NCBI GenBank assembly: GCA_009859145.1
Contig: VRVR01000065.1
Span: 13,253-77,252 of the forward strand
Origin: Andalucia godoyi And28
Taxonomy: Eukaryota > Protista > Jakobida
Direction of reading: 5' to 3'
Length of the DNA stretch: 64,000 nucleotides
Below are positions 1 to 19,198 of this stretch, in pieces. The notes beneath the pieces were generated by a model that worked only from the letters and a program-made list of their open reading frames with translations, was not told the origin of the DNA and ran no database searches. Numbering within the stretch: position 1 is the first letter of the stretch; each line of letters begins with the position of its first letter. Position numbers and translations under genes: made by a program.

Positions 1-1
1 C

Positions 2-534: not shown

Positions 535-1449
535 TTAATCGACCTCTATGCACTCTTTCCACGGTCTTGAACTGGACGTGGAAACGTCCTCCTTGCCTCT
601 TTTCGAAACCTGCGAGGCCGCGCCTTCCGCACTCGCGACTCGCTTCCGGAGTCGTTGGCGCCGCAAATCGAGTTTGCTCTGCGCAATGGAAATAACAGTA
701 GGGCTGATACTTTCTCCGTTGACTGACGGCATTTGAAATGCTGGATCAAACGCAGGATCAAACATATCTTGCCGTGCATACATCAACAGTCCGATGTCCA
801 GGTTGCTGGCTGTTCGTCTGTTACCGTATGCTTCGAGGAGATTGCTTGTTAACGTGTAGCCCAATGTGTTACCTTTGGGATCCGTTCCATCGTAGAATAT
901 CCATTCGGCGCTGGTAGGGCACCAGGCCGGGTCCACCGTGCAACTTGGCCTTACAAAAGCGGGGCAAAAGTGCGATTCGTCTTTGTTGAGCACCATCGCG
1001 ACCAGCTTGTACAATAGTCGGGCGGTTCCAATTGACACAGAATATTCACAATCCCGGATGAAGGGGATTGTTCCATTGGACTGGGGAGTTCCTCGTGGCG
1101 CGAAAGCACCCTGTCCAAATGAGACGATGACGTAAGAAGGACATTTCGGATATTTGATGCTGTTGACATCCCAACAAACAAGCTTGGAGCATGCTTTGCA
1201 CTTTACATCAAGCGGACTGTTACAGGACGTCATCTGTATTTCGATATACGAGGTCATGGGCATCTCCGTCGCGTTAGCGCTTGGATTCAGTTCAATCACA
1301 GATGGTGAGCACACACACTCGTGGCCATGTTCGCATTTTCCATGCGCTTCGAACGACCACAAAGGATTGTCCCCAGTCATGTACTTTGCCAAACTATCAA
1401 TGAGTAAGAACTGTCCTCGCCGGAAGCCCGTTGGCGAACTCATCTCATA
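535..1449 (-). pseudogene. USP (C19) deubiquitinase-like C-terminal part, CYLD-like His box; no Cys box found; 5' end interrupted by Tc1
   Basis: LYKLVAMVLNKDESHFCPAFVR...EWIFYDG resembles the CYLD His box (LFAVLCIETSHYVAFVK...WLFFDS). QFLLIDSL, CxxC pairs and PSYVIVSF fit the USP middle region. The first 8 codons of the listed ORF come from the Tc1 TIR. Confidence 0.55.
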
Positions 1450-2738
1450 CAGCTGTGGCCAAAAATCTTGCACACGGTGTTCGTCGATTTTCTTGTAAAC
1501 GACTGTAGCTCAAAACTTGATTTTCATTTTTTTGAGTTCGTTGCTCGATGGCGCATCGAATGAGGTATATCAATGCCTGGTTTTCTCTCCTTTGGCTGCA
1601 ATGCACTCCTCCAAGCGCGATCGCATCGAAGAAACCAAATTTTTGAGGGTTTCTCGTGGCACCGCCGCCCATTCCTCTCGAAAGAACTCCACGACTTGCT
1701 TGAGATTCGCGGGTTTTTTTCGCTCAACCTTGTTCTTGACGATGTGTCACAGGTTTTCGATGGGGTTGAGGTCGGGTGAAGCCGAGGGCCATTGGAGCAA
1801 TTCGGGCGTGAAGTCGGCGAGCCACTGCTTGGTCTTGCGCGCAGAGTGTTTGGGGTCGTTGTCTTGCTGGAAGCGATAATCGCCCGCGAACAACTCTCCT
1901 GCACGTTCGGAGAGATGGTGCTCCAGAATGTCGATGTACTTGTCGGCGTCCATGGTTCCTTCGATCGCCACGACGTCGAATGTTCCATCCGCGCAGAACG
2001 CTGACCAGATCATGACCTTGGGCTGCATTTTCGGCACCCTCCGGTACTTCTTCTGGTCTACCCGGGTCCACATGCACACAGTATTTCGGTAGAGCTGCAC
2101 AGACGTCTCATCGCTGAAGATTGTGCGGCTCCAGTCATCGTCAAGGTGGCGCTTACACCACCCAACTCGGTTGGTGCGGTGCGTCTCCGTCAGCATCGGC
2201 GTGGTCGTGGGCAGGCGGTACTCGTAGTTCTGCGCTGCCAAGTTGCGCCGCACAGAGCGAGCCGATATGGTAACATTATGCTCCTAATAAAGACGGTCGG
2301 CAATGGACTGGGAAGTGTGTCCCTCATCATAGCGGAGCCACTGACCGATTGCGCACTTGTCGCGTTTTCCCAGGAGAGTCCGACGTCCGCTTCCTGCTGC
2401 GCGTTCCAGAGAGCCCGTCTCACGGAGCTTTCTAATCCAAAAGTAGACAGTTCGTCGGGAGCAACAAAACTGCTCGCAGATCGCCTTCACGGAAGGCTCT
2501 CCTTCCTTCACAAAAGACAAAATGGCGTTTTCGAGAGTGTTTTTCATGAAGCCCGCCTGAATCTCGCATTATCTCAGCAACGGCTCATCATGGAGACACG
2601 CGGCTTGACAAATCGGATCCGCACTGTCACGGAGGAGAATTCGTGATAATCCTCACGTCAGTAAAAATGGCGCCAAAGTGTTCAAAAATCCGGCACAGTA
2701 GAAGTGAAAAAGTGCAAGATTTTTTGGCCACAGCTGTA
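1448..2738 (-). mobile_element. Complete Tc1/mariner DNA transposon (1450-2736) with TA target-site duplication
   Basis: Left TIR CAGCTGTGGCCAAAAATCTTGCAC (1450-1473) and right TIR GTGCAAGATTTTTTGGCCACAGCTG (2712-2736) differ by one extra T. TA occurs at 1448-1449 and 2737-2738, and a transposase lies inside. Confidence 0.95.
1570..2547 (-). pseudogene. Tc1-family DD34E transposase with two in-frame nonsense codons
   Basis: One frame of 325 codons: N-terminal HTH (SRRTVYFWIRK...GSGRR), FSDETS, QQDNDPKH and WPSASPDLNPIENL*, with 34 residues between D and E. TAG at 2284-2286; TGA at 1747-1749 replaces the conserved Trp. The frame continues HIVKNKVE...KGEKTRH* to 1570. Confidence 0.95.
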
Positions 2739-3010
2739 AGAGATTTCGCACAGTGTTTGCGTGTCCGCTGGATGTCGAACCGCGAATAACAAATTCACAG
2801 AATGGATTTCTTATTATTGATCTCATTTGTGATTCTGTCTTGTTTTGCGATTGAGATATGTAGTGTGATTTCGCGAGCTACGTTTGGGTTTGTGGTGAGT
2901 TTTATGAGTTTCGAGGTTTCGCAGAAAGGGTCCAAGAAGAACGCTAGAGCATGCCAGTTTACAGGGAGCGTGTCTTGCTGCTCCGTTCATGCTGGGAGCA
3001 CGCAACCTTG

Positions 3011-5842
3011 TCATTTCGCGGTCCGAGTATGAAGAATATGGCAGTTCGATTCTTCGCTGGAAATGTTGGTTTTGAGTGATTTTGAAGAAGACTGCTGGAC
3101 AAGCTGCTGCATGACTTCAGATGCAGACGAGTCACATGATCGGACGCAGGGATTCCAGACGAAAAGACGAGAAAGTTCAAAGGACAATGGCGCTATCCGA
3201 GAACACGCTAACGTGCCATGAATCTGCGTACGGGACTCCATTTCCATGTACGTTCCAGAGAATGTGAAGTCCTCATTGTGAATTTTCATTTGAAGCACCG
3301 CAGAACAATCAGCAGAGATGCTTCCCGTGACGGAATGTGAGTCATGAGCTTCAAGATTCTTGGAAATCACATGACCTTCATCAGTGATATGCAACAGTAT
3401 ATCGAAAGCAGGATATGCAGTCGTTGTACACTGTGATGACGTTTCGCAAGTTTCTAAGCGACACATCCAATATCCGCTTCGTTGCTTGTGTACGGGTCGC
3501 TTCCGGTCAAGAACTGGGTGCAATGCCTCAAATACGGATCTGGGGACCAGTTGGTCATAATCAGGCCAGCAAATCTCGGAAACGACAGCAACTTTGGAGG
3601 CCGAACTGATTGCAGGGTACCACCGCTCTTCCAGCAGTTCATCCGCTTTTGGTACGTCTATTTCATTTAGAATGCGTTCCTTCTTTCCAGCAAGTAGTGG
3701 ACAGGAAACCTTCGCAAGATGACTGGAGTGCTGAACATCAGTATGGCAGCTGCTCCGCAATTCTTCCATGCTCTGCGGGTTAATATTCCACTTGGCAACT
3801 ACAAAGCTGTTCAACGTTGCGATAATATCACCAGTGAAAGGATGGAATCCAATACCTATAACATCATTTGGAATGACAGACGCCAAACAATTGTGCAGAT
3901 TTCCATCGCCGTCATAGGGAAACCCATGAATGCAACCAGAAGAACAGAAGCCAGTTGACCATCCATACGAACCGAGTGGTTGCATGCAGTTAAAGTCCAC
4001 GTCATTGATTAGTCCGACAGTGACCATGAAATCCGATGAATCCATTAGAACAGAAGTGCATCGCATTCTCACCTCGAAAAAATAAAATGGAACGGTAGCA
4101 GGTATCGGAAAATTTGCGAGAGCGCATCGCGGTTCGTTGGCCGGAAATGTGAAAACAGTTGAAACACTGCATTCTGACTGTTCAATTCCATTTTCGCTCG
4201 AATAACTACTCTGAGATGACCCCTCGTGATTCCGATTTTCAATATCATCCACGTTATCAATTTCAAAATCATCATTTTCCTCTTCCTTCAATTCAATTGC
4301 TGGATCTTCCAAAAAACCAGATGGAAGATCAACGTTACAATCAAATACCACAGACAAAGGTGGTACGACATCACTCACGGAGGCCGTCAATAAGCTGACG
4401 TGAAAAGGGAGCATTTTCCCCAAAAACCGTCCACTTTCGTCTTCCAACACAATATCAAAACTTGCAACAATAACAGGACAGTCGGAGGCAACAACAGATC
4501 GATACCGTAGATGAGCTGAAATTCTTGATTCGTAACCTTGGTTGGGAAGCGACAGATTTCTCAATTCCACTATCTTGTAAAAGCGCTGTTTCCATTTGGG
4601 AATGTAAACATAAACTTTCAAAGGATACACATTGTCATCTTCCAGACAAGGATTTCGTATCCTGAAACAATCCACAACGTTCACATCTTCAAAATCATAA
4701 ATGGAATATGTGGATTCGCATGTATGACCGTCAAACGCGCAATGTCTTAGCATTGGAACCTCGAGACCTTCATTAGCACTTGCATCTTCTGCAATAGTAT
4801 CAACATCCAAAGAATCCGTACTGTCATCAGAATCAGACGATCGACCATTACTCGAAAACTCTGAGAATCTGCAGAGTGAAAACCACAATTCATCCTTGAC
4901 CTCGACGATGCAAGGAGTGGCTTTGACAAAGGAGCACTTCTCATCTGCAGATTTAAACATGGCGCAGATGGCGTAGGTGCCCGGACTCTTAATGCAAAAG
5001 TGAGACGCCATTCCGATCCGTAAATCAAAAAACGCCTCCGATTCCTCAGTCGAATTGATGAGAGAGTCTGTCCGAACACGGACAACTGTGCATTGTCGGA
5101 TATTGCGGATAGGAAAATCGGAGCATAGTCGAAGATCAACCTGTGACCAGTTCAATGATGTGTCACATTTGAGCAAACAATCAGCTTGCTCTTCAGAAAG
5201 TCCGTCGACGGATACTAACACGAATGCATCAGTCTCTACGAAACGATCCCACTGGGAAGACCACCAAGCATTCAAATAAAGAGAAACGGGCTCATATCGA
5301 CGTATGCAGATTCTTGCTCTTGATTCTGGAAGCGAAACTTGAGGAACTCCCGTGGGTACAATTCTAAATTCGGAATGCAACGTAAACGTCGAAAACAACA
5401 GAGTACATTTCCGAATCACATCCACAAACAAGTTTGAAGTGCGTAAATCGAACCGAGCGAGATCGTGCACATTAATTGTATTTCCTGAAGAGCTCCCAGT
5501 AAAATAATAACAGACAAAGCGTTTCAACAACACGAGAGGATCTCTGACATGCTGCACGATATCCGATTTAAACGATATTCGAATGTCTGATTCCACGTAC
5601 GCAACAAACGCATCTGCAAAATCATCTTTAGACACCATTGAACGATCACGACCAATTTTTTTGCGCCAAAAGTCTTTGAGATATGCATTTGAAATGGAAG
5701 CCGAAGAATCGAAAGTGGATTCCAATGACTCTTTTTGCACTGCAAATGATGCTACTCCAATCGCGGACTGTAACGTTGTCACGTAATCTTTGAGACAACT
5801 TTCAAGAATGAAGATTCGCTTCTTCAGTCTTGTCTGCTTCAT
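3011..5842 (-). CDS. Large protein with Cbl-type EF-hand-like region and SPRY/B30.2-like domain
   Basis: 943-aa ORF. DFWRKKIGRDRSMVSKDDFADAF resembles the Cbl TKB EF-hand. YFFEVRM...VTVGL...PLGSYGWSTGF...NDVIGIGF...ATLNS is a SPRY pattern. Confidence 0.7.
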   Translation of the reverse strand: MKQTRLKKRIFILESCLKDYVTTLQSAIGVASFAVQKESLESTFDSSASISNAYLKDFWRKKIGRDRSMVSKDDFADAFVAYVESDIRISFKSDIVQHVRDPLVLLKRFVCYYFTGSSSGNTINVHDLARFDLRTSNLFVDVIRKCTLLFSTFTLHSEFRIVPTGVPQVSLPESRARICIRRYEPVSLYLNAWWSSQWDRFVETDAFVLVSVDGLSEEQADCLLKCDTSLNWSQVDLRLCSDFPIRNIRQCTVVRVRTDSLINSTEESEAFFDLRIGMASHFCIKSPGTYAICAMFKSADEKCSFVKATPCIVEVKDELWFSLCRFSEFSSNGRSSDSDDSTDSLDVDTIAEDASANEGLEVPMLRHCAFDGHTCESTYSIYDFEDVNVVDCFRIRNPCLEDDNVYPLKVYVYIPKWKQRFYKIVELRNLSLPNQGYESRISAHLRYRSVVASDCPVIVASFDIVLEDESGRFLGKMLPFHVSLLTASVSDVVPPLSVVFDCNVDLPSGFLEDPAIELKEEENDDFEIDNVDDIENRNHEGSSQSSYSSENGIEQSECSVSTVFTFPANEPRCALANFPIPATVPFYFFEVRMRCTSVLMDSSDFMVTVGLINDVDFNCMQPLGSYGWSTGFCSSGCIHGFPYDGDGNLHNCLASVIPNDVIGIGFHPFTGDIIATLNSFVVAKWNINPQSMEELRSSCHTDVQHSSHLAKVSCPLLAGKKERILNEIDVPKADELLEERWYPAISSASKVAVVSEICWPDYDQLVPRSVFEALHPVLDRKRPVHKQRSGYWMCRLETCETSSQCTTTAYPAFDILLHITDEGHVISKNLEAHDSHSVTGSISADCSAVLQMKIHNEDFTFSGTYMEMESRTQIHGTLACSRIAPLSFELSRLFVWNPCVRSCDSSASEVMQQLVQQSSSKSLKTNISSEESNCHILHTRTAK

Positions 5843-5860
5843 GATATTCCAGGGAGTGCA

Positions 5861-6376
5861 TTACCAAAGCACTTTCGGTTTTCGAACTTGCCTCAAGGCG
5901 TCGGAAATCCCATCAAGAAACCGTTCAATGTCCTGCACGAGAGCTTCCAAACCAAAAAACGTTGTATGAACATGATTCAGTTCGCCTTGATTTAAATTCA
6001 CAAATTCATGCAGCAAAGCAGCTGTGGATAACGGATTTATAGGCACAACCTGTGAAAACTTCGTTGAACGATGCTTCCCAGTTCCGTCATCGTTCTCCAC
6101 TGCTGAAGGATATGGTAGCGATTTCACGATAGAAAGACCGTCAGCATTTCCTACTGGGTGACGTAAATGAAGTTGGGCTTCCTCGAAAGAACCACGGAGG
6201 ACCGCATCAAGAACTTTTCGCAAACTTAGATCCCGAGGGATCATCAAAATGACAACTTGAAGCAAATTCAGCGAGGAACTTAGTTGTTGCGCATGATCGT
6301 AAACATCCTGACACTCGTCCAGCAATGCTTTGGTACGTAATAATGCTGAAAGAATCCCTTTGGCCAGACTGTCCAT
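5861..6376 (-). CDS. Helical-bundle (MLKL/HeLo-like?) N-terminal segment, in frame with 3011-5842 and separated by a single TAA
   Basis: MDSLAKGILSALL...amphipathic helices...KVLW*CTPWNIMKQ. It is in the same frame as the downstream ORF, with only TAA 5861-5863 between them. Confidence 0.5.
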   Translation of the reverse strand: MDSLAKGILSALLRTKALLDECQDVYDHAQQLSSSLNLLQVVILMIPRDLSLRKVLDAVLRGSFEEAQLHLRHPVGNADGLSIVKSLPYPSAVENDDGTGKHRSTKFSQVVPINPLSTAALLHEFVNLNQGELNHVHTTFFGLEALVQDIERFLDGISDALRQVRKPKVLW

Positions 6377-6829
6377 TTTGAGTTGAAAAACGATCAAAGA
6401 GGACTACAAATGAATTTTCGGAAGGCAGCGCAGAAAGAGTGAAGGGATGGCTCGTGGCTGTTGGCGAGCCCCCAGCCCCCCGCTCATTTTCAGTGGTCGA
6501 CATGTATCGACCATTTTCGGAATTCGCTGATTGCACTTTCTGGAACGAGAACACCTGCTGTTCATGTCTGCCAGGATTATTCAGAGTTGATTTGCAAGTA
6601 AAGGTATCGAAAGCATGATTAGAAGCTTGGAGATTGTGATAGACTTGTTCGTACCAGTATCTATATTCAAATGAGGATCACACAAAAGTTTACAACACAA
6701 CAGAAAATACTCATTACATTTCCGAATCCAGAGAACACATGAACGCATTTTCAATCATGCTCAGTCGAAACTGCTTCCATTGTTAAAAGTCCGCGCCTTC
6801 TGGCTTTGACCGAAAACAATTACGAGTCA

Positions 6830-8043
6830 AATCAAAGATTGCGAACAATACATGAGGATTCCACGAAATGCGGTTTGCAAATGCAAAAAGATTCTCACAA
6901 ACCGAGGCATGCGGATTACACATTTGAAGAAACTATTGGATGATTGGAAGCGTTTCGTAGAGTTCGCAGGACAAACCACAAATTCGTATGGTCATCGTTC
7001 ACACGGATACCCATATTCTCGATTAGACATTCCAATCCAAATGCCATCAAGCCATCTGAGATTCGACTGTTACTCTTCATAGAAACGGTTAAGAATGGAC
7101 GCTGATAATACTGTCGACAAAAGATGATACGCAGAAAGTGGGAAGGCACCGCACGTCCTTGCAAGACCTCCGGATGATCATCGCGTCCCAGTGTCACCAA
7201 CACAGAGATAAAACTAAACCACATGTTTTTCGTCCAGAAGACGAGATGTCGAGAAGCTTCCAAAGACGTGACACGTTTTTGACGATCAGTTAGAATCATT
7301 TGCTCCAGCAAGTCTTTCAATAGAACAGAATAAAACTGGTGAAAAGCACCACCATTTGATCTCTTCCAGTTTAAGACGAGAATAATCTCATTTTCCGTTG
7401 CGCATCTTGCATGCCGAAGCGATTCGTCTCCATTGAGAAGAGTCTACCAACAAAAATAGAATCAACCAACCCATACTCCAAACATCACTGCGGCAACCTG
7501 GAGTTGGTGATGACCCTTGCAATTCCGGTGGACACCACGATTCAACATTCGTCGTCTCCAGCGGTTCTTCTATGGTGCGGTTTTCCGTCGTCGGTGCAGT
7601 GATCAGTATGGAACTGCTGAAATCACACAAACGAAATCGAATTCGATCACTTTCACGAAGACTCTTAACGAGAAGATTCTCCGGTTTAATGTCCAAGTGA
7701 ACAACCTGTCGTTGATGCAGTGCGACGAGGCCAGGCAAAAGGTTCTGGATTTCAGGGAGAATTCGTAACAAGGATACTGTCGAGGTCTGAGAGGATTTCT
7801 GACTTTGCGCAAGAGACAAATAAGAGATTGTCGACCAGGTCACGAACTCACGATCAACGGATCTTTCGCAAAATTGGAATAATCAGAAAAGTTCCAATTT
7901 CGTGTGTCGCCAGAATCACAGAAAGATCCGCTACGCCAATACATCAGATATGGGTGAAACCATTCGGATGGCGAGAGGCAATCATTGCAAAATCCCTCAA
8001 TTTCGACAATGCACCCAACTATTTTTCTATTCGACATTTTCAA
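6830..8043 (-). pseudogene. Fragmented protein kinase + KEN ribonuclease (IRE1/RNase L-like)
   Basis: Pieces in different frames. 7840-8043 is N-lobe-like (YLMYWRSGSFCD). 7388-7843 has HLDIKPENLLV, LCDFS and SDVWSMG. 6916-7320 has DLLEQMILTDRQKR...RHLVFW and the KEN motif VLRTLRNASNH. Confidence 0.75.
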
Positions 8044-8084
8044 CAGAAATCACATATAGAATGAAACTCGCAGGAATCAGCAAC

Positions 8085-11000
8085 CTAGTGGACTTCTTGC
8101 GTTTCACTACGTAATCGACAATTTTCAGATTGCTCGAGGCAAAGATTGAGATCGCGAGATACCGCCATTGTATCTGGGTGATCAGGTCCAAGAACCTGTT
8201 CTCTATCACGAAGCACTACTCGATATCCTAACAATGCGGCATCGTGATCCCCATGAAGCATGCGACACCGGGCAATACTGTGATGTGTTGTCAGCGTCGA
8301 CGGATGCAAATCACCCAACAACCGCTGTTGTGAATCCATAACAGATGAAAACTCCGCTAGGGCATCATCATACATTCCTTGGTTCATTAGACAGTATGCA
8401 ATTTCATGGCGTGTCTCATAGATGTCAGTATGCTCTAAGTCAAACAAACGTTGTTGAATGTGCAAAATGTCTTTGAACTCGGAGATTGCCAAATTGCTGT
8501 GCTGTAACATTAGGCATTTAGCACGCCTATAGCGTGTGCGCACGACACTCGAATGATCAGAATGAAGCGTTTGCTCTTGTTCTTTGAGTAGACACTCTAA
8601 CTGCTCCAATGCCACATCCAGATCCCCTTGAAACATATGACACGAGGCAATACTCTTTCGAATACTAAAAATTTGTTCATGATCACGTTCAACAGCTTGC
8701 AGTTGACCATGCAGTAACCTGTCGAGCTCATGAAGTGCATTGTCATATTCGCCGATGAGTTTCCAACAATGAACTACTCCATATCGACAGTGGAAAATAA
8801 GTGAATGGCTACTGCCGAGAGCCTGCTCAGCGGCGGTTTGCACATCCCGAAACTGTATAATTGCCATTTCGTACTTTCCTTGATCCGCCATGGACCATCC
8901 TATGCAACACCTCAAGTCCAACACTTCTACGCACGCTTCACCAAGAATTCTTGTCTGTACCGCAACCAATTCTTCGAAAACTTTCTGTGCACTGCTGTAC
9001 TTCCCGTGAGCTTCCAGACAACGCGCAATGTCCGATCGACAAGCGAGTGTCTCCGGGTGTTCGGAGCCTAGAACCTTCAATTGAGTCTCGAAAACAGACT
9101 CAAAGACTTTCAATGCTCGATTATATTTGCAATGGGACTGTAAAGTCAACCCCATGTCAAGCCGAGATCGCAGTGTATCTAGGTGCTCGGTACCAAATAC
9201 TTGCGCTCGTACGGAGACAAGAAGTTCAAATTGCTCAACAGCTGAACCGTAGTCACCAAGCTGTTGATGACAACGAGCTATACTGCTGCGGCAAGCGAGG
9301 GTTATTGGATGCTCAGAGCTCAGAGTTTCCAGTTGACTCTCAAGAACAGACTTGAACATTTTGAGAGCGCTCTCATATTGACCATCGGATAGCAAAGTTA
9401 GCGCCATATTATACAGGAATCGCAGTGTATCTGGATGCGCTGGACCGGAAATTTGTTCCTGGACACTAATCAGCGATTCGAACTCTTCTCGGGCATGACG
9501 ATAGTTTCCTAGACCACTGTGACAAAGAGCAATGTTGTTGCGACAATTCAGTGTTGTTGGATGTTCAGCGCCTAGAACCTCCAAATCAGTCTCAAGGAGA
9601 GACTCGAACATTTTGAGAGCGCTCTCATATTGACCATCGGATAGCAAAGTTGCAGCCATATTATGGCGAGATTGCAGTGTACCTGGATGCACTAGACCTA
9701 AAACTTGTTCCTGGACACTAATCAGCGATTCGAACTGCTTCCGGGCATGACGATAGTTTTTGAGGCAACAATAACAAAGAGCAATGTTGTTGCGACAATT
9801 CAGTGTTGTTGGATGTTCAGCGCCTAGAACCTCCAAATCAGTCTCAAGAAGAGCCTCGAACATTTTGAGCGCACTGTCATATTGGTGGTGAGACTGCAAA
9901 CCGAGAGCTACGTTATTGCGAGATTTGAGGGTCTCGGGATGCTTGCTGCCAAGAATTCGCTCTCGAATGGCTAAAACTGTTTTGAGATGCGTATCAGCCT
10001 CGGAAGACTTTCCAAGAGATTGTAGACATAACCCAAGATAGCTCAGCATTCCAAGTGTTGTCGAGTCCTCAGAACCAAATTTCCCGTCATAAAATTTGTA
10101 GAGCGACTGAAACATAGCATACGCATCTTCGCATTTTCCTTGACGAAAAACACATACAGCCAACTTCTGCCTTGCGATATCAAGATCGCTAATCCGTTCT
10201 GATCCTTCCGACGATTGTTCCAAAACATCATTCAAAAGATGAGCAACTATCTTCTCCTTCCCAAGATCAACAAAGCTGTCTGCGACTTTGCATATAAGAG
10301 TTGCACCCAAACCTTGCGCCAACAATGAAGATAAATGGTCGAAAGGGAACAAGTTGCACACACACACATTTTGACCACCGCGATGGAGACCACTCACTAA
10401 TCGACAACATTGATCAAAATAATCAGCGGTATTATTGCCAAAGACTTCTTCAAAAATGAACAGCGTTCGTTGCCGGGACGATAGCAACTGCTCTGCATCA
10501 ACTGGGGATGCATATATGGCGAAATCCGGACGGCACCCCATTCTAATAGCATTAGCGACATGAAATGCAGTAGGTCTATGCACAACACCATCAGACAAAG
10601 TCCGTTTCATCATTGGTAACAACATAGAGTCAATGAAGTGCGGAAGATTCTCGGTAGATCCTAAGTATCCAAATGAATCACGCCATTTCTCAAACGATTT
10701 TGAGGAATCATTATCCAGCCGTGCATTTTGAGGATGAAATAACCATGACAAAACTAATCCCAGAGAAAAAACATCAGATCCAGCAGTAGGAGCCTCGTTT
10801 CTCTGTTGCTCCAGACTGTTCCAACCTGGAGTTCCCGTGATGGGCTTTGCATTCTTCTGGACTTGTGCAAGCCCGAAATCGCACAGACACACATGTATCG
10901 ATCGAATTGCATCAACAGACTCTGGACCAGAAATTTCGACAACGTCTTTTTCGACATTTTCACGAATCCATACTTCGCGAGACACAAGCACGTTTTCTGG

Positions 11001-12308
11001 CTTCAAGTCAAGATGCATGTACTCTCGAGAATGCATGTATCCAACAGCAGTCGCAATCTGGGAAGCGATGTGGCGACAAACAAGTAACATCTCATGCGGA
11101 GATGATATCCATCGAGCTGACCAGTCTGTTGATGACACGTAGTCCTTCAATGAACCATGATCAAAGTACTCTGTAAACACTGCTCCGGAGTGAGCAAAAA
11201 CAATCGGTGCAATATGCGAATGACCATCTAGAGCGCTCCACATGTTTTCTTCCACACGCTGAACCTCGGGATGGCATGAAATCTTACAAGCAAGCACTTG
11301 TTTCTGCGACCCAAGATGGACGCGATACACTGCGCCGCATCCACCTACCCCGATGCATTCCAAGACTTCCATGAGCGGTTGTCCGTCGGAATGATGGCAT
11401 AGCGTTTGCACCAGACTCTCCATCTTCTCGTGTGCATACATCAACGGCAAGCGAGGACAGATGGAGAGCTCCAAGGAAGAAGCCGGCCCCTTCGCACACG
11501 AATTCCACGCCCAGCAAAGCAACACAGCGCAACAACAGGCATCAATGTCCGTGCAATAGGTGTAAACAGGTGGTACATTTTTCTGCTTGGAAATCTGCAA
11601 CTGCAAGCAGTAAAGGCGAGGAACGTTGGCAGTAGTACACGAAAGACTGTCAGTGATGGCTGTGGAAAAATCGTGATGAGATCCAACACCGTGAAGAGAA
11701 AACTCAGCAAAACACGCAGACGCTTCCACTGAACGATCCACGGATTTACGGCTGAATCCGTTGACAGACAAAGCATTGGATAGCTGTAGAATTGTGGACT
11801 TCACCAAACTGCCACCGCTTTGCAAGCCTTCCTCGTCTGATTTACGGACACAATAGCATATCAACGGTTTGTGCACTCGAATTTCGTGATTCGCATCGTA
11901 TTTCCAATGACGCAGAGCAGTGCAAGAACCAAAAGCAGACAAAGAAAGATCTTTAAAATCTGAATCCAAAACACACCACACCGCATCACTGTCGACAGCG
12001 CCCCAAAACAAATTAGATGACCAACTCCGAATACTATCTTTGATCTCAGCAACGTTACGTACGGATACAACGTTTTGTCCTGAAATCGCAACGCAAAACA
12101 ATCGCACCACAGGAATCACTTCATTTCTATTCTCATTCCGAGGCCAAAGCTTAGCTAACTTTCGATCATCTTCCGTCAGTCGCGTATACAATGTACACAA
12201 AATGGGATACACCTTCGTGAGAGATGAAGACCATGAATTCGGGATGCCAAACGACAAGCCTTTGAGTTGAAGTTGCGAAAGCGAGTTTTCCAGTGAATAG
12301 TCAACCAT
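8085..12308 (-). CDS. Ser/Thr protein kinase with long kinesin-light-chain-type (42-aa) TPR array
   Basis: 1407 aa. IGVGGCGAVY, LACK, HLDLKPEN, DFG, GTPGW and SDVFSLG are present, followed by many HPxTLxxRxNxAxxLxxxGxYxxA repeats to the C-terminus. Confidence 0.92.
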   Translation of the reverse strand: MVDYSLENSLSQLQLKGLSFGIPNSWSSSLTKVYPILCTLYTRLTEDDRKLAKLWPRNENRNEVIPVVRLFCVAISGQNVVSVRNVAEIKDSIRSWSSNLFWGAVDSDAVWCVLDSDFKDLSLSAFGSCTALRHWKYDANHEIRVHKPLICYCVRKSDEEGLQSGGSLVKSTILQLSNALSVNGFSRKSVDRSVEASACFAEFSLHGVGSHHDFSTAITDSLSCTTANVPRLYCLQLQISKQKNVPPVYTYCTDIDACCCAVLLCWAWNSCAKGPASSLELSICPRLPLMYAHEKMESLVQTLCHHSDGQPLMEVLECIGVGGCGAVYRVHLGSQKQVLACKISCHPEVQRVEENMWSALDGHSHIAPIVFAHSGAVFTEYFDHGSLKDYVSSTDWSARWISSPHEMLLVCRHIASQIATAVGYMHSREYMHLDLKPENVLVSREVWIRENVEKDVVEISGPESVDAIRSIHVCLCDFGLAQVQKNAKPITGTPGWNSLEQQRNEAPTAGSDVFSLGLVLSWLFHPQNARLDNDSSKSFEKWRDSFGYLGSTENLPHFIDSMLLPMMKRTLSDGVVHRPTAFHVANAIRMGCRPDFAIYASPVDAEQLLSSRQRTLFIFEEVFGNNTADYFDQCCRLVSGLHRGGQNVCVCNLFPFDHLSSLLAQGLGATLICKVADSFVDLGKEKIVAHLLNDVLEQSSEGSERISDLDIARQKLAVCVFRQGKCEDAYAMFQSLYKFYDGKFGSEDSTTLGMLSYLGLCLQSLGKSSEADTHLKTVLAIRERILGSKHPETLKSRNNVALGLQSHHQYDSALKMFEALLETDLEVLGAEHPTTLNCRNNIALCYCCLKNYRHARKQFESLISVQEQVLGLVHPGTLQSRHNMAATLLSDGQYESALKMFESLLETDLEVLGAEHPTTLNCRNNIALCHSGLGNYRHAREEFESLISVQEQISGPAHPDTLRFLYNMALTLLSDGQYESALKMFKSVLESQLETLSSEHPITLACRSSIARCHQQLGDYGSAVEQFELLVSVRAQVFGTEHLDTLRSRLDMGLTLQSHCKYNRALKVFESVFETQLKVLGSEHPETLACRSDIARCLEAHGKYSSAQKVFEELVAVQTRILGEACVEVLDLRCCIGWSMADQGKYEMAIIQFRDVQTAAEQALGSSHSLIFHCRYGVVHCWKLIGEYDNALHELDRLLHGQLQAVERDHEQIFSIRKSIASCHMFQGDLDVALEQLECLLKEQEQTLHSDHSSVVRTRYRRAKCLMLQHSNLAISEFKDILHIQQRLFDLEHTDIYETRHEIAYCLMNQGMYDDALAEFSSVMDSQQRLLGDLHPSTLTTHHSIARCRMLHGDHDAALLGYRVVLRDREQVLGPDHPDTMAVSRDLNLCLEQSENCRLRSETQEVH
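9354..9857. repeat. Recent 252-bp (two-TPR) tandem duplication inside the TPR array
   Basis: GAACATTTTGAGAGCGCTCTCATATTGACCATCGGATAGCAAAGT occurs at 9354 and 9606. GAGCAATGTTGTTGCGACAATTCAGTGTTGTTGGATGTTCAGCGCCTAGAACCTCCAAATCAGTCTCAAG recurs 252 bp apart. Confidence 0.9.
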
Positions 12309-12558
12309 TACGAATTAATGGAGCAGAACATCAAAAAAGAAAAAAGGAGAAAGGAGTCCTATTTGGCTTTTTTAGAAAACGGAATTTTACGTGTCAGGCG
12401 TGTCAGCGTGCTGTCAGCCTTCTGAAAACTTCAAGAAGACAGCCTGGTGCCGAAAGGGAAAATGTGTGTGTTCAGAGTTCGGCTTTCACTTCGAAATCAC
12501 CTCTCTGCAGACGAATTCGCTCAAAAGTTTTCTCATTATTTCCAAATTCCCAAAAAGC

Positions 12559-15500
12559 ATGCGCCTAATTCTATTTGATTTGGAAAACACTGCTATTGTT
12601 CCTTCCAGGAATGAACGATGGTTGCTACTGGCTTCCAGTTTGATGGCAAGTTCCACTCTTGACGCCAAACAGTTGTTAAATCGAATCCACAAACATTTGG
12701 ACAGCAATGAGTCGGTTGTCCTGTTAGGACTGTGGAGTACAGCTCGCCAGGAATACTTATTTTCAGCTGACGATTTTGAGTATCGGAAATGCCGTGAGAT
12801 TCAGGAGCGTCTTTCACAATTCGATGAACTCCTTGTTCTTATTGTTCCTGATTGTTCGCGTACGTTCGTGGATGATACCGTTCTTCACCGCAGCGTTGTC
12901 GATTTAGGTTTGCGCCGAGTTGATCCAGTGAATCCAGAATTACGTATAACGCATCACAACAAATATTCAATGGCTTCGAAGGAAAGCGTTCAATCTGTGC
13001 CGTGGGCATCAAAATCATTGCTGCATGAATGTCAGGCCAGCGCCACTGATATTACGTGTGATTGGATGTTTCAGTTTGAGCAAGTCAATTTGTGGAGATT
13101 TGATCGCTGTCTCTCTTCACCGGAAGAGAAAACTTTGAATGATGCAATTTCAAAGGTATTAGAAGAGGAATTGAATGTGTACATTCGAATATCCCCTTCG
13201 TGTGTTGATTCGAACAGACCGTCATTATTTGGATTCCTTTTCTCGCCATTGGGCGCGTTTGGACCAGACTCTGCCCAAGAGCCAGTATTCGGCGCAACTT
13301 TTGACAGCGAAGGCAAAAAAATTGTCGTTGGATGCTTTTTGTATCATGTCGTCTCCGGAGACTTGGAACTGGGCACGTTCGGCAATTTGGAACCTTTTGA
13401 GGACTCTTCTCTTGAATTTCATTTTGCGAGTGATGCGCTGCATGTGCGCGGATTGACAGTTGCAGAAATAGTTGTTGATACACATACGAATCATGTGTCA
13501 CCGACGAACCAGCGTACATTCTGTCTGCATCATGTGCAAATTGAATCCGATGGAACTATGGTTCTCTGGTTCCGTTGGGGTTCACGGATTCTTCTGTGTG
13601 TTTTGTTGAGATGTGTGAGGGATGAAATGAAGGAAGTTCGATACAGCCTGTGGACGCTGGATGGGGCGACAAGCCAGTGCAATGCTGCACTTGGTTGTGC
13701 ATCTGTTGTGTGGTCGCCCGAGAAAGGATTTGCTATCCTTCCTTCCGATGTTTATGGTTTCCGAAATGGTGTTTCTGTTAGCACTACGGACATTCGTTGC
13801 TTTCCTGACTTCCATAATGTGTCTGCTGGAATCCGAATGTGTCTCGGAAGCCATTTATCGGACGGAAGTATGCGTGATACACCTTCTTTCACGTCGTTGG
13901 CCAACTGCGACCGCGGTGAGATCTTATTTTTTGAACGATCTTCTTTTGCCTATATCGCCAAGTTCGTAGGACGAGTTCAATCTGGTCGTTTGGCGTCTGA
14001 TGAAGACTCCTGTGAACTGTGGATGCAGCACAACGTCACAATAGAAGGTCGTTTTGTGAACGAGGTTCCATCAGGTATCATGAAATTGAAAAAATGCGGA
14101 ACTGTGGAATGTACGGCTTACCGCAATGGTTCTGTTGTGGAAGAGATTATGCCCTTGAGCGAGCGATATGCTGCATTCATCCAGCAATTGCGGAAAGCAT
14201 TCTCTACCGACGAGATCTTCCGAAACGAGAATGAGAATTGCCTTTTCGTGGTTCTTCATGACGGTCTACCAGTGTGTTTATTTTGTGTTCGATGCCACAT
14301 TGGAAGCGGTGCGGAGGCAATTGTGTATCGAGGTCTAACTGCGCATCATGGTCCCGTTGCAGTGAAGATTTTCCGTCGATTACTCGATGAGCAAACACCG
14401 GAGGCCAGAACTCAGAAGTTTTTTACGGATCAGCTGGATTATATGGGAGAGGAGGAGTTGTTTGGCCGTATCCCTCGTCAGTCGACAGGCCGATTTCCTA
14501 GTTTGGTTCGAGTACTATACATCGGAGCCGTCGATTTCGGGACGAGTATTCGGAATATTACTCGACGGGAAAACGCTCTTGTAATGTCATACTATCCGGA
14601 AGGCGATGTGTTTGGAAAGACTTCACAGATCCAAAAGTCTCTCTCTTCAATAGCACTGTTCCAACAGTTGAAGCTTCTTACGAGCACGGTCGCTGCTCTT
14701 CATGAGGCAAAGCTTATTCATCGAGATATCAAGCCCAAAAACATTTTGTTGGACAATGGTGAATCGAACGGTTCTTGCTCTTTTCGACTCACAGATTTTG
14801 GGATCTCGTCCGTCCACTTGGAGGCACAAACGTATGTAGATCCCTCTGCGAACGCAAATCATTATCTTGGATCTCCATGGTGGCGACCCCCTGAGTTCGT
14901 TCTCCTCCCTGCATTGCGAACCTATCGTTCAGATGTATTCAGCCTTGGGTGGACTTTGTTGTATCTCGCGCAAGTCCAACAAGAGTGTATGACCAGCAAG
15001 TATTTGCAGCATGCCTGTCAAATCTCCCCAGATTCAAGTTCGGATTTATTCTCTTCTGATGACGAGAACCATTACTTTGAATACATTGAAATGGTAAGCA
15101 GAGACATGCAGTCGTTGCGAGAAGGTCGTATTGAGATACATCTGCGGACAGATGTCCATTCGACGGCGACGTCTCGCATCCTGTTTTCACACCTTGTGTC
15201 TCGAATGGTAGCGTATGACTATTCTGAACGTTTGAAAATGGAGAACGTTATCGCGCATCCCTTGTTTTGGAACACAAAGCAGTGTGTGCAGTTTATTGTT
15301 GATCTTGCTCAGCCGTTGGCAGATTTGTTCCGAGAAGTTCAAGGCACTAACGTCTTGCACTACCAAAATTTCGAACACGAACGCCATTCCTTTGCGCTTA
15401 GGCACTTTTTGTGGCAAACTGTGTCTCCATCTGCCTTACTTCCTTTTTCATCGTCAAGTCTGCGATCGCCCTCAGATTTTGTGCTGTTCGAGTCAACTCT

Positions 15501-15903
15501 AAATCCAGTCTCGTTTGAACAGGCGTTGCTGGATTATTGTGTCCATCCAAAGAATAATTATTCCGTGTACAAGCGCCTATGCTGTCAAGGTCGGATGTGC
15601 ATATTCTTCGTTATGCGTTTTATCCGGAACTTAGCATGCCATACACCATTGTTGTTACGAGTATTCCGTGAAGAAGTGTGTCGCCGGTATGAGAACCACA
15701 CGCTTGTGTGTCTCCTGCTTGGTCAATGTGGAAAGAACGGTGATCTTTTTGGTCGTATTATTGAGGTTGCCAGCGAATTGTCGCTCATCTTATTGGACAA
15801 TGAGAGTCAGTTGTCAATAACGGATCGCCAGATCTTGTTTTCTCTTCGAAGACACGGATTTCTTCCAAAATCTGAGCCTGAGGGATTACTCGGCCTTGGA
15901 TAA
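12559..15903 (+). CDS. Soluble kinase-KEN ribonuclease (IRE1/RNase L-like) with long uncharacterised N-terminus
   Basis: Kinase motifs IGSGAEAIVY, VAVK, HRDIKPKNILL, DFG, PPE and SDVFSLG, then RMVAYDYSERLKMENVIAHPLFW and the KEN motif VMRFIRNLACH. No signal peptide or TM helix is evident. The first ATG is at 12559 (ORF open from 12391). Confidence 0.85.
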   Translation: MRLILFDLENTAIVPSRNERWLLLASSLMASSTLDAKQLLNRIHKHLDSNESVVLLGLWSTARQEYLFSADDFEYRKCREIQERLSQFDELLVLIVPDCSRTFVDDTVLHRSVVDLGLRRVDPVNPELRITHHNKYSMASKESVQSVPWASKSLLHECQASATDITCDWMFQFEQVNLWRFDRCLSSPEEKTLNDAISKVLEEELNVYIRISPSCVDSNRPSLFGFLFSPLGAFGPDSAQEPVFGATFDSEGKKIVVGCFLYHVVSGDLELGTFGNLEPFEDSSLEFHFASDALHVRGLTVAEIVVDTHTNHVSPTNQRTFCLHHVQIESDGTMVLWFRWGSRILLCVLLRCVRDEMKEVRYSLWTLDGATSQCNAALGCASVVWSPEKGFAILPSDVYGFRNGVSVSTTDIRCFPDFHNVSAGIRMCLGSHLSDGSMRDTPSFTSLANCDRGEILFFERSSFAYIAKFVGRVQSGRLASDEDSCELWMQHNVTIEGRFVNEVPSGIMKLKKCGTVECTAYRNGSVVEEIMPLSERYAAFIQQLRKAFSTDEIFRNENENCLFVVLHDGLPVCLFCVRCHIGSGAEAIVYRGLTAHHGPVAVKIFRRLLDEQTPEARTQKFFTDQLDYMGEEELFGRIPRQSTGRFPSLVRVLYIGAVDFGTSIRNITRRENALVMSYYPEGDVFGKTSQIQKSLSSIALFQQLKLLTSTVAALHEAKLIHRDIKPKNILLDNGESNGSCSFRLTDFGISSVHLEAQTYVDPSANANHYLGSPWWRPPEFVLLPALRTYRSDVFSLGWTLLYLAQVQQECMTSKYLQHACQISPDSSSDLFSSDDENHYFEYIEMVSRDMQSLREGRIEIHLRTDVHSTATSRILFSHLVSRMVAYDYSERLKMENVIAHPLFWNTKQCVQFIVDLAQPLADLFREVQGTNVLHYQNFEHERHSFALRHFLWQTVSPSALLPFSSSSLRSPSDFVLFESTLNPVSFEQALLDYCVHPKNNYSVYKRLCCQGRMCIFFVMRFIRNLACHTPLLLRVFREEVCRRYENHTLVCLLLGQCGKNGDLFGRIIEVASELSLILLDNESQLSITDRQILFSLRRHGFLPKSEPEGLLGLG

Positions 15904-17177: not shown

Positions 17178-17235
17178 CGGGGGTTTCGTAGTTAGTTTTC
17201 ACAAAGAAACAAGAGAGGGAACAAAGTTGGAAGAC

Positions 17236-19077: not shown

Positions 19078-19198
19078 GAGTCCAGGGTTGATGTTTGGTC
19101 AGAGAAGTAAATAAAAGGATGAAGAAGACGAAAATTCAAGTAAGAAGTGGATATGAAAGTATGAAGATTTCAACAGGAAAAGAATTCAAGGAGAGAGC

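What the first reader, a model, noticed from the sequence alone, without database searches (positions are those of the whole stretch)
535..15903. Candidate protist innate-immunity/cell-death cluster: TPR sensor-kinase, two kinase-KEN RNases, helical-bundle-SPRY protein and CYLD-like DUB
Seen: five adjacent genes with little spacing. The kinase-TPR and the intact kinase-KEN are head-to-head with only about 250 bp between start codons. Established: kinase-KEN is the RNase L/IRE1 effector; long TPR arrays are sensor modules in fungal and protist NLR-like proteins; N-terminal four-helix bundles (MLKL/HeLo) execute membrane death; SPRY domains bind pathogen proteins in TRIMs; CYLD edits ubiquitin in necroptosis signalling. 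Inference: a co-regulated sensor-kinase-to-RNase defence module with fast turnover (one KEN copy broken, a transposon insertion, TPR duplication). It sits next to the virus-like region.
Basis: inference. Interest (0 to 1): 0.78.

Follow-up and report, generated by a model that had tools for sequence, protein, structure and literature searches.

The report
Jakobid IRE1/RNase L-like kinase gene neighbourhood
This stretch of the protist Andalucia godoyi holds one intact and one decayed copy of a species-restricted, soluble IRE1/RNase L-like kinase with a very diverged RNase-like tail, on either side of a kinase-TPR gene. The claim that the five genes form one immune or cell-death module rests only on their being neighbours in a tightly packed genome.

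Summary
The gene layout is real. Four reading frames lie on the minus strand and one on the plus strand, and 250 bp separate the two divergent start codons.

Domain calls:
- Confirmed: kinase + 10 TPR_12 units, with a 252-nt tandem duplication, and a Tc1/mariner insertion.
- Partly confirmed: "kinase-KEN". No Pfam PF06479 hit. The kinase, the HPLFW junction and the first KEN helix match IRE1 specifically (E 6e-9). The HEPN catalytic motif R-N-x3-H is invariant in all four C-terminal sequences compared, including the broken copy.
- Confirmed: the second copy is a truncated, frameshifted pseudogene.
- Supported only by a pairwise test: SPRY (versus RanBP9, z 7.8, E 1.5e-4). Pfam gives nothing.
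- Unsupported: the MLKL/HeLo bundle and the CYLD-like DUB. The DUB-like ORF has no Cys box, and its similarity to CYLD is not significant.

The helical ORF and the SPRY ORF share one frame and are separated by a single TAA.

The kinase-KEN-like family has four protein-database members plus the broken copy. All are from A. godoyi. None has a transmembrane segment or ankyrin repeats, and all share a new ~560-aa N-terminal domain.

Nothing tests a functional link between the genes. Tight, divergent packing is the norm in this genome. I rate it a new variant of a known kind, of moderate interest.

The parts
12559..15903 (+). Intact gene of the A. godoyi-specific kinase + KEN-like family, 1114 aa from the first conserved Met. 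It comprises a novel N-terminal domain (12559 to about 14290), a protein kinase (14296-15267) and a helical KEN-like C-terminal domain (15268-15900). The annotated model P0001 covers only the last 688 aa.
   Evidence: Pkinase E 4.7e-25. IRE1 is the best PDB match. Paralogues P0002, P0003 and P0004 are all from A. godoyi. The N-terminal domain is conserved among paralogues but matches nothing in Pfam or PDB. No transmembrane segment; VAVK, HRD and DFG are present.
15625..15642 (+). RNLACH: an Rx4H motif of the HEPN/KEN RNase active-site type, with Asn after Arg.
   Evidence: Translation. R, N and H are invariant in the four-sequence family alignment. It is the best local hhalign/HMM match to the RNxxHH helix of true KEN domains, though not significant on its own. 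Motif definition from PMC3710099.
12309..12558 (.). 250-bp divergent intergenic region between the kinase-TPR gene and the kinase-KEN-like gene.
   Evidence: Sequence. The spacing is ordinary for this genome.
8085..12308 (-). Kinase-TPR gene, 1407 aa. It has an unknown N-terminal 313 aa, a non-RD (HLD) protein kinase (about 10557-11369) and a long TPR_10/TPR_12 array (about 8139-10241).
   Evidence: Pfam. HLDLKPEN and DFG motifs. The kinase has only generic PDB matches: SOBIR1, PERK, IRE1.
9338..9884 (-). Recent tandem duplication inside the TPR array: 252-nt unit, equal to two TPR_12 hairpin pairs, 2.2 copies at 89% identity.
   Evidence: Tandem Repeats Finder. Near-identical peptide blocks are visible in the translation.
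6916..8060 (-). Pseudogene fragment of the same kinase + KEN-like family. It has no N-terminal domain and no kinase strands beta1-3. There are frame changes near 7850-7950 and at the A4 run near 7395. A stop at 6916-6918 falls 10 codons after the RNASNH motif (6940-6957), with further stops beyond.
   Evidence: Three-frame translation and sequence. Pkinase E 6e-16 on the 151-aa piece. 31% identity to the intact copy. It aligns with the family C-terminal domain.
5864..6376 (-). It has no detectable relatives. It is in frame with the next ORF.
   Evidence: GC3 of 0.39 is close to the downstream ORF's 0.41.
5861..5863 (-). In-frame TAA, followed after 18 nt by the ATG of the 943-aa ORF. It could be a nonsense mutation, read-through or a base error within a single gene.
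   Evidence: Sequence.
3011..5842 (-). 943-aa orphan ORF with one SPRY-like domain.
   Evidence: No Pfam hit, no PDB hit and no homologue among 5.8 billion clusters.
3743..4123 (-). SPRY-like segment, aa 574-700 of the 943-aa ORF.
   Evidence: Smith-Waterman score 70 against the PDB-validated RanBP9 SPRY, versus 30.7 +/- 5.0 for shuffles, 0 of 1000 reaching it. phmmer --max gives E 1.5e-4 in the one-to-one test. Translation.
1450..2736 (-). Degenerate Tc1/mariner element of 1287 bp. Terminal inverted repeats lie at 1450-1474 and 2712-2736, with TA on both sides. The transposase is split over several frames.
   Evidence: DDE_3 E 7e-12 and HTH_Tnp_Tc3_2. Sequence and repeats.
535..1443 (-). It has a Cys-rich segment and weak resemblance to a USP His box. 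It has no Cys box. The transposon sits about 6 nt upstream of its ATG.
   Evidence: No Pfam or PDB hit. Only itself in the protein database. Against CYLD, z 0.3 and E 0.068. Removing the transposon in silico adds no Met-initiated N-terminal extension with a Cys box.

Best explanation
Shown: the region is a lineage-specific, fast-turning-over gene neighbourhood of the jakobid Andalucia godoyi. Its core is a small family found only in this species. The family has four proteins in the database plus the broken copy here. Each protein joins a new ~560-aa N-terminal domain to an IRE1/RNase L-type protein kinase. Three of the four database proteins also carry the all-helical C-terminal domain, and the broken copy keeps a truncated remnant of it. 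That domain begins like a KEN domain and keeps the HEPN catalytic motif R-N-x3-H. ANDGO_07190 ends before it. One intact member (12559-15903) and one decayed member (6916-8060) flank a non-RD kinase-TPR gene.

Inferred mechanism for the intact protein: like IRE1 and RNase L, a signal received by the N-terminal domain drives dimerisation or oligomerisation of the kinase domains. This brings two C-terminal domains together into a metal-independent endoribonuclease that cuts cellular or foreign RNA. The protein is soluble like RNase L, but it has no ankyrin repeats. Its kinase looks catalytically competent, as in IRE1.

Other genes: the SPRY-containing ORF is interrupted by a stop codon, and the 302-aa ORF has a transposon next to its start. 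Both are orphan genes of unknown role and may be decaying.

Not shown: a conflict or stress role for the family is plausible but unproven. That the five genes act together is not supported by anything beyond adjacency.
For: Organism and family restriction. The only strong hits among 1.84 billion representative proteins are the gene itself and ANDGO_07774, ANDGO_07190 and ANDGO_07409 (E 0 to 1e-29). The next hits are generic kinases. The N-terminal domain profile finds no relatives in JGI metagenomes, and the whole protein and its C-terminal domain find none in IMG/VR.

IRE1-type kinase. IRE1 chains are the top PDB matches. The 23 best Foldseek hits of the AlphaFold model are all IRE1 kinase-RNase structures, with alignments of about 490-510 columns against about 330 for kinase-only hits.

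KEN-like tail. The family profile hits IRE1 alone at E 6e-9 across kinase helix alpha-I, HPFFW and the first KEN helix; the next kinases are at 2e-3. An HMM built from 7 true KEN domains matches its positions 1-30/40 in three members at E 1e-8 to 8e-8. hhalign gives 94% probability. R, N and H of RNxxxH are among only 15 invariant columns of the alignment, and the motif matches the catalytic helix co-linearly.

Soluble, with intact kinase motifs.

Turnover. A pseudogene copy, truncated ANDGO_07190, the Tc1 insertion, the TPR duplication, the in-frame TAA, and low GC3 compared with the conserved genes in the same window.
Against: PF06479 is not detected in any family member. After the first helix, the C-terminal domain has no significant similarity to KEN (P 0.06 to 0.4).

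The AlphaFold model of that domain has pLDDT of about 40. Its input alignment also contained true IRE1-like sequences, so the long Foldseek alignments are weak evidence.

The distance from HPLFW to RN is about 50 residues longer than in KEN. No RNase activity, ligand or expression data exist. The frameshift at the A4 run could be a 454 homopolymer error, although the truncations and extra stops cannot be.
Confidence: 0.6

Rival explanations
1. The five genes form one co-regulated innate-immunity or cell-death module. The TPR kinase senses a pathogen and phosphorylates the kinase-KEN RNase. A helical-bundle-SPRY protein and a CYLD-like deubiquitinase act as executioner and regulator.
For: The genes are adjacent, and the TPR-kinase and KEN-like genes share a divergent 250-bp promoter region. 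Two diverged family members flank the TPR kinase. There are immune-like signs of turnover. The TPR kinase is non-RD. HEPN/KEN domains are often used in conflict systems (PMC3710099). Orphan ORFs and a helicase gene lie next door.
Against: There is no NB-ARC or NACHT domain. The MLKL/HeLo and CYLD calls have no statistical support, and the DUB-like ORF has no Cys box. The bundle and SPRY ORFs are split by a stop codon. One KEN-like copy is dead. The cluster proteins share no domain other than the kinase. Tight, divergent packing is the genome-wide norm. Synteny and co-expression were not testable.
Confidence: 0.12
2. Unrelated signalling genes that merely sit side by side. The C-terminal domain of the kinase family is a degenerate, non-catalytic remnant of KEN that serves as a dimerisation or regulatory module, and the proteins work as ordinary protein kinases.
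For: PF06479 fails, and most of the domain has diverged beyond recognition. The kinase catalytic motifs are intact. At least one true KEN protein in the library, P0018, has itself lost the RN motif. The genome is compact.
Against: R, N and H of the catalytic motif are invariant in family members that are only 23-50% identical in this domain, including the pseudogene. This points to selection on an active site rather than on a scaffold.
Confidence: 0.2
3. The cluster arrived with, or belongs to, the neighbouring virus- or transposon-rich DNA, so its genes are of foreign or mobile origin rather than host genes.
For: GC3 is lower (0.39-0.45) than in the conserved genes at 43-63 kb (0.52-0.66). 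There is a Tc1 element, and orphan ORFs and an SF2 helicase lie directly to the right. The genome paper reports subtelomeric scaffolds rich in transposon- and virus-like sequence.
Against: No relatives of the kinase-KEN-like protein, its C-terminal domain or the SPRY ORF were found in IMG/VR. The family has several diverged paralogues (31-74% identity) within the A. godoyi genome, which points to long residence.
Confidence: 0.08

Closest known systems
IRE1 (Ire1p/ERN1; S. pombe Ppk4): ER-membrane kinase-endoribonuclease of the unfolded protein response
   Same: It is the best sequence and structure match for the kinase. The HPFFW junction and first KEN helix are shared. An R-N-x3-H motif lies in the C-terminal helical domain. 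The VAVK, HRD and DFG kinase motifs are intact. One paralogue was auto-named 'ppk4'.
   Different: There is no signal peptide, transmembrane segment or lumenal sensor. A novel ~560-aa cytosolic N-terminal domain takes their place. The C-terminal domain fails PF06479 and has about 50 extra residues before the catalytic helix. The family has several copies with pseudogenes, whereas IRE1 is a conserved single gene.
RNase L: vertebrate 2-5A-activated ankyrin-pseudokinase-KEN antiviral RNase
   Same: It has a soluble kinase + KEN-type architecture. Its catalytic helix motif 'RNLGEH' (sequence recalled from memory) compares with 'RNLACH' here. A sensor domain lies N-terminal to the kinase. An immune-style birth-and-death pattern is plausible.
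   Different: There are no ankyrin repeats. No link to an OAS partner has been found; OAS was not looked for. The kinase here looks active rather than a pseudokinase. There is no detectable specific relationship beyond that shared with IRE1.
Lineage-specific expansions of KEN/HEPN domains (Oikopleura, monocots), described by Anantharaman et al. 2013
   Same: A KEN-type domain has been recruited into a small, lineage-restricted, apparently fast-evolving family.
   Different: In those expansions the KEN domain is separated from the kinase. Here the kinase is kept and a new N-terminal domain is added. The lineage is a jakobid (Discoba).
Kinase-TPR (TPR_10/TPR_12) proteins, and NB-ARC/NACHT-TPR NLR-like proteins of fungi and bacteria
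   Same: A long kinesin-light-chain-type TPR array with a recent internal duplication. Ser/Thr kinases followed by a TPR-like segment also occur among the library hits, for example P0083 (read by eye, not scanned against Pfam).
   Different: No NB-ARC or NACHT NTPase is present, so it is not a STAND or NLR protein. The N-terminal 313 aa are unknown.
SPRY domain proteins of the RanBP9/RanBPM, Vid30 and SPRYD3 type
   Same: The YFEV...GL...SYG...GDVIG pattern is present, and pairwise similarity to the RanBP9 SPRY domain is significant.
   Different: It is below Pfam detection. It sits in a 943-aa orphan protein with no LisH/CTLH, RING/B-box or PRY parts.
CYLD / USP deubiquitinases
   Same: Only motif-level resemblance: 'SHF..AFV' and 'EWIFYD' against CYLD 'SHYVAFV' and 'AWLFFD', and a co-linear 'LVCWDVNSIKYPKCPS' against 'LLEWSFINSNLKFAEAPS'.
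   Different: There is no Pfam UCH hit, no PDB hit and no significant similarity to CYLD. The N-terminal third carrying the catalytic Cys is absent. There are no CAP-Gly domains.

Membership tests
IRE1/RNase L kinase-KEN family | Protein kinase domain of the IRE1/RNase L type | tested here: met
   Pkinase E 4.7e-25. IRE1 chains are the best PDB sequence hits, at E 1e-11, and the 23 best Foldseek hits.
IRE1/RNase L kinase-KEN family | The kinase continues directly, through HP[FL]FW, into the first helix of the KEN domain | tested here: met
   The family profile hits IRE1 only, at E 6e-9. hhalign gives 94% probability against a reference of 7 KEN sequences. The KEN HMM matches at E 1e-8 to 8e-8.
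IRE1/RNase L kinase-KEN family | Match to Pfam PF06479 (Ribonuc_2-5A) at the gathering score | tested here: not met
   No hit, even at E=10, for the whole protein, for the isolated C-terminal domain, or for paralogues P0003 and P0004. The control P0018 scores 1.1e-28.
IRE1/RNase L kinase-KEN family | HEPN active-site motif Rx4-6H, with a polar residue after the Arg | tested here: met
   RNLACH, RNLACH, RNILTH and RNASNH. The R, N and H columns are invariant. Motif definition from PMC3710099.
IRE1/RNase L kinase-KEN family | KEN (permuted HEPN) three-dimensional fold of the C-terminal domain | tested here: inconclusive
   The single-sequence AlphaFold run failed, with pLDDT 31. With a 25-sequence alignment the domain is all-helical but has pLDDT of about 40. 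Foldseek alignments to IRE1 extend into it, but with rmsd of 12-14 Å.
IRE1/RNase L kinase-KEN family | Endoribonuclease activity activated by dimerisation | not testable with these tools
   Needs biochemistry.
IRE1 proper | Type I membrane protein with an ER-lumenal sensor domain | tested here: not met
   No 19-residue hydrophobic window is typical of a transmembrane helix in any family member; the only peak is kinase strand beta1.
RNase L proper | N-terminal ankyrin repeats that bind 2-5A | tested here: not met
   No Ank family hit in Pfam. The N-terminal profile finds nothing in PDB.
NLR / STAND sensors | Central NB-ARC or NACHT NTPase next to the repeat array | tested here: not met
   Pfam shows only Pkinase and TPR families on the 1407-aa protein. 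Its N-terminal 316 aa have no hit.
SPRY domain (PF00622) | Match to the Pfam SPRY model | tested here: not met
   No hit at E=10, either for the whole ORF or for the isolated segment.
SPRY domain (PF00622) | Significant similarity to a SPRY domain of known structure | tested here: met
   Against RanBP9 SPRY (validated against PDB 5ji7): Smith-Waterman z 7.8, with 0 of 1000 shuffles reaching it; phmmer --max E 1.5e-4.
MLKL / HeLo / RPW8 four-helix-bundle death domains | Match to a family model or known structure | tested here: not met
   No Pfam hit at E=10 for the 178-aa ORF. No structure prediction was possible. It is separated from the SPRY ORF by a TAA.
USP / CYLD deubiquitinases (PF00443) | Match to the USP/UCH model or to a solved USP | tested here: not met
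   No Pfam hit at E=10. No USP among PDB hits at E=10. Against CYLD (validated against 2vhf): z 0.3 and E 0.068.
USP / CYLD deubiquitinases (PF00443) | N-terminal Cys box carrying the catalytic cysteine | tested here: not met
   The ORF starts about 10 residues before the 'QFLLIDSL' segment. Removing the Tc1 element in silico adds at most 25-45 residues, with no Cys-box pattern, before the stop of the upstream gene.
Tc1/mariner transposons | DDE_3 transposase with an HTH, terminal inverted repeats, and TA target duplication | tested here: met
   The transposase is frameshifted, so the element cannot move on its own.

The most novel reading that the evidence does not exclude
Andalucia godoyi has an RNase L-like defence or suicide system that arose independently of the vertebrate one. 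It would be a small, rapidly turning-over family of soluble kinase-HEPN RNases whose new N-terminal domain senses infection or a second messenger. The neighbouring non-RD kinase-TPR protein would act as its partner. This would be the first such system in Discoba.
Probability: 0.12. Interest if true: 0.8.

Novelty: new variant of a known kind. Interest (0 to 1): 0.42.

Why it matters
Outside the conserved, single-copy IRE1, kinase-KEN proteins are best known from vertebrate RNase L. A soluble, multi-copy, species-restricted version with a new N-terminal domain in a jakobid would show that the IRE1 kinase-RNase chassis has been redeployed more than once. Jakobids are a deep-branching lineage with almost no functional genetics. 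It would also provide a new candidate sensor domain to characterise.

The result is also a caution. In a compact genome, adjacency and domain names recalled from motifs were not enough to call an immune gene cluster.

Tried and rejected
- Pfam at E=10 on whole proteins and isolated segments gave no KEN, SPRY, USP or HeLo hits.
- PDB phmmer on the isolated C-terminal domain, the 943-aa ORF and the DUB-like ORF gave nothing relevant.
- The word-indexed homologue search found nothing for the 943-aa ORF, and only the ORF itself for the DUB-like ORF.
- Single-sequence AlphaFold of kinase + C-terminal domain was unusable, with pLDDT 31. The second run, with 25 sequences, resolved only the kinase.
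- The first MAFFT alignment (A1) misplaced the pseudogene pieces and was discarded.
- Look-ups of the encoding contigs for P0001 and P0002 found nothing on record, so paralogue synteny was untestable. Exact look-up of my four ORF translations found none in the collection.
- Metagenome and IMG/VR scans with the family alignments and single proteins found no relatives.
- The profile of the family's N-terminal domain matches no other protein of the cluster, and nothing meaningful in PDB.
- A 31-nt GT..AG intron spanning the TAA at 5861 was rejected. It is shorter than any verified A. godoyi intron (55-756 nt) and is not a multiple of three.
- An NLR-like reading of the TPR protein was rejected for lack of an NTPase domain.
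- PHROGs on the right-hand ORFs matched only a helicase.

Full report
**Origin and setting.** The closest named relatives of the long plus-strand ORF are proteins of the jakobid Andalucia godoyi (EukProt EP00762). The window's own gene models P0001 and P0151 come from the same source. The published genome is about 20 Mb, compact and intron-poor. A sample of neighbouring genes had spacers of 44-691 nt (mean 217) and was mostly in opposite orientation. The assembly is 454-based with Illumina correction, and it omits subtelomeric scaffolds rich in transposon- and virus-like sequence (PMC7050145).

**The observation.**
- On the minus strand: a 312-aa ORF at 535-1473, a Tc1/mariner element, a 943-aa ORF at 3011-5842, a 178-aa ORF at 5861-6397, kinase fragments at about 6916-8060, and a 1407-aa ORF at 8085-12308.
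- On the plus strand: an ORF at 12391-15903. Its first conserved Met is at 12559, 250 bp from the ATG of the 1407-aa gene.

Small spacing and divergent orientation are the base rate in this genome. They are not evidence of co-regulation.

**Kinase-TPR: confirmed.** Pfam gives Pkinase (E 3e-21, aa 314-584) and ten TPR_12 stretches (E 4e-82), with no NB-ARC or NACHT. The catalytic loop reads HLD, so this is a non-RD kinase, and DFG is present. Its PDB neighbours are generic: SOBIR1, PERK and IRE1 at E 1e-8 to 1e-6.

**The 'kinase-KEN' gene.**
- *Kinase.* The kinase is clear (E 4.7e-25), and IRE1 chains are its best PDB matches.
It gives no hit even at E=10 on the whole protein, on the isolated C-terminal 211-227 aa, or on the paralogues. 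The isolated domain also finds nothing in PDB.
- *Family.* An exhaustive HMMER search of 1.84 billion representative proteins found only three real relatives, all from A. godoyi: ANDGO_07774 (55% identity, same architecture), ANDGO_07190 (74%, ends before the C-terminal domain) and ANDGO_07409 (31%, auto-named 'ppk4', the fission-yeast Ire1). After these come ordinary kinases.
- *Junction and first helix.* A profile of the family's kinase end plus C-terminal domain (A2) hits IRE1, and only IRE1, at E 6e-9. The match covers kinase helix alpha-I, HPFFW and the first KEN helix. The next kinases score 2e-3. I built a reference alignment from seven library hits that carry KEN domains: the first, P0018, scores Pfam PF06479 1.1e-28, and the other six were found by phmmer similarity to its KEN domain. 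hhalign against it gives 94% probability for the junction region. An HMM built from it matches its first 30-40 positions in three family members at E 1e-8 to 8e-8.
- *Catalytic motif.* Beyond that helix nothing is significant. The best residual alignment is nevertheless co-linear: 'VMRFIRNLACH' against 'LLRAIRNCKHHY', the catalytic helix (P 0.06). R, N and H of R-N-x3-H are three of only 15 invariant columns across four sequences that are 23-50% identical in this domain. This is the Rx4-6H HEPN motif, with the polar residue after Arg that contributes to KEN catalysis (PMC3710099).
- *Structure.* AlphaFold without an alignment failed (pLDDT 31). With 25 sequences the kinase is confident, but the C-terminal domain, although all-helical, has pLDDT of about 40. 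The 23 best Foldseek hits are all IRE1 kinase-RNase structures, with alignments of about 500 columns. However, rmsd is 12-14 Å, and the input alignment contained IRE1-like sequences.
- *Verdict.* I conclude that this is a strongly diverged KEN-derived domain that probably keeps its active site. Membership is only partly demonstrated.
- *Differences from known proteins.* No family member has a transmembrane segment or ankyrin repeats, so they are neither IRE1 nor RNase L in architecture. Their ~560-aa N-terminal domain is conserved among the paralogues (A4) but matches nothing in Pfam, PDB or JGI metagenomes.
- *Annotation.* The annotated model P0001 (688 aa) leaves this conserved N-terminal region out.

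**The broken copy: confirmed.** The 151-aa piece at 7388-7843 is a kinase C-lobe (E 6e-16), 31% identical to the intact gene. Downstream, in another frame, follow 'RHLVFWTKNMWFSFISVL' and 'LRTLRNASNHP', which correspond to the junction helix and catalytic motif of the family.

The copy lacks the whole N-terminal domain and kinase strands beta1-3, because the kinase-TPR gene's stop codon lies at 8085-8087, about 25 nt upstream. It changes frame at least twice. It stops ten codons after the motif, with more stops beyond. One frameshift lies in an A4 run and could be a 454 sequencing error. The truncations cannot be. At 31% identity, this is an old paralogue and not a recent duplicate.

Two members of a family of about five lying within 6 kb in a 20 Mb genome is unlikely by chance, roughly 0.006 by my own arithmetic. 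It points to local duplication.

**The 'helical-bundle-SPRY' protein.** Neither ORF has a Pfam or PDB hit, and the 943-aa ORF finds no homologue among 5.8 billion clusters.

For SPRY, I compared aa 543-733 with the RanBP9 SPRY domain. The Smith-Waterman score is 70, against 30.7 +/- 5.0 for 1000 shuffles, none of which reached it. An unfiltered phmmer comparison gives E 1.5e-4 over aa 574-659. So a SPRY-like domain is supported, at 3743-4123.

The MLKL/HeLo idea has no support at all. The two ORFs are in the same frame, separated by one TAA and 18 nt. The putative 31-nt intron across the stop is too short and would break the frame. This is either one gene with a nonsense codon (or read-through, or a base error), or two genes spaced far more closely than any reported in this genome. 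The two ORFs have matching GC3 of 0.39 and 0.41.

**The 'CYLD-like DUB': not supported.** There is no Pfam hit at E=10, no USP in PDB at E=10, and only the ORF itself in the protein database. The Smith-Waterman score is at the shuffle mean (z 0.3), and unfiltered phmmer gives E 0.068.

The annotated protein (302 aa) begins at MSSPTG. The Tc1 element's TA target lies about 6 nt upstream of that ATG. Removing the element in silico adds at most 25-45 residues before the stop codon of the upstream gene, with no Cys box among them. If this is a USP relic, it lacks the catalytic cysteine.

**Transposon.** A 1287-bp Tc1/mariner element occupies 1450-2736, with 25-nt terminal inverted repeats and TA flanks. 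Its transposase is frameshifted.

**Are the genes linked?** Apart from the kinase domain, the cluster proteins share no domain.

The four large ORFs have lower GC3 (0.39-0.45) than the conserved genes at 43-63 kb (0.52-0.66). This fits young, weakly expressed or fast-evolving genes. It also fits a variable region continuous with the orphan ORFs and helicase at 16-36 kb. No viral relatives were found.

**Mechanism and verdict.** The best-supported reading (confidence 0.6) is as follows. This is a variable neighbourhood built around a jakobid-specific family of soluble IRE1/RNase L-like proteins. By analogy, these would dimerise through their kinase domains on a signal received by the new N-terminal domain. 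Dimerisation would assemble a HEPN-type RNase.
- Shown: the architecture, the restriction of the family to one species, the conserved motif and the decay of some copies.
- Inferred: the RNase activity, the mode of activation and any defence role.

The five-gene immune module is a hypothesis with about 0.1 probability. I rate the finding a new variant of a known kind, interest 0.42.

Noticed in passing
window 5861-5863 (with ORFs 5864-6376 and 3011-5842, minus strand): A single in-frame TAA and 18 nt separate a 171-aa ORF from the 943-aa SPRY-containing ORF. Both have the same low GC3. This looks like one gene carrying a nonsense codon, read-through or a base error.
   Followed up: partly
window 12559-14310 (+): The annotated model of the kinase-KEN-like gene (P0001, 688 aa) omits about 430 N-terminal residues. 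That region is 73% identical to the equivalent part of paralogue ANDGO_07190, so the public gene model is probably too short.
   Followed up: partly
P0002 = ANDGO_07190 (elsewhere in the A. godoyi genome): This 74%-identical paralogue ends just before the HPLFW junction, with a divergent tail ('SRMQICFEKF...'). It is a second family member that has lost the KEN-like domain, or else a faulty gene model.
   Followed up: no
window 3011-15903 versus 43477-62606: GC3 of the four large cluster ORFs is 0.39-0.45. In the conserved genes of the same window (phosphodiesterase, MIP channel, hydrolase, adenylate cyclase) it is 0.52-0.66.
   Followed up: partly
window 16000-36000: A run of ORFs with no Pfam or PHROG match, including a 979-aa ORF at 29548-32487, surrounds an SF2 helicase (ResIII/DEAD, phrog_16) at 22028-23887. 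I did not find a viral hallmark gene.
   Followed up: partly
window 1442-1449 and 2737-2744: The host sequence flanking the Tc1 element is itself nearly palindromic around the TA target (ATCTCA-TA ... TA-AGAGAT).
   Followed up: no
window about 10990-11015 (kinase-TPR) and 7690-7715 (broken copy), minus strand: Both the kinase-TPR protein and the pseudogene copy have a non-RD catalytic loop (HLDLKPEN and HLDIKPEN). The intact KEN-like family members have HRD.
   Followed up: no
window 1-243 (+) and 281-312: The acidic C-terminal end (D/E-rich) of a gene runs off the left edge of the window. It is followed by an 11-nt microsatellite, AATCTTGCAGC, repeated 2.9 times.
   Followed up: no
P0018 (library hit, not in the window): This protein has two kinase domains and a genuine PF06479 KEN domain, but its catalytic helix reads 'LIGDICKH' instead of RNxxHH. 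It is a true KEN domain that has lost the Arg-Asn pair.
   Followed up: no
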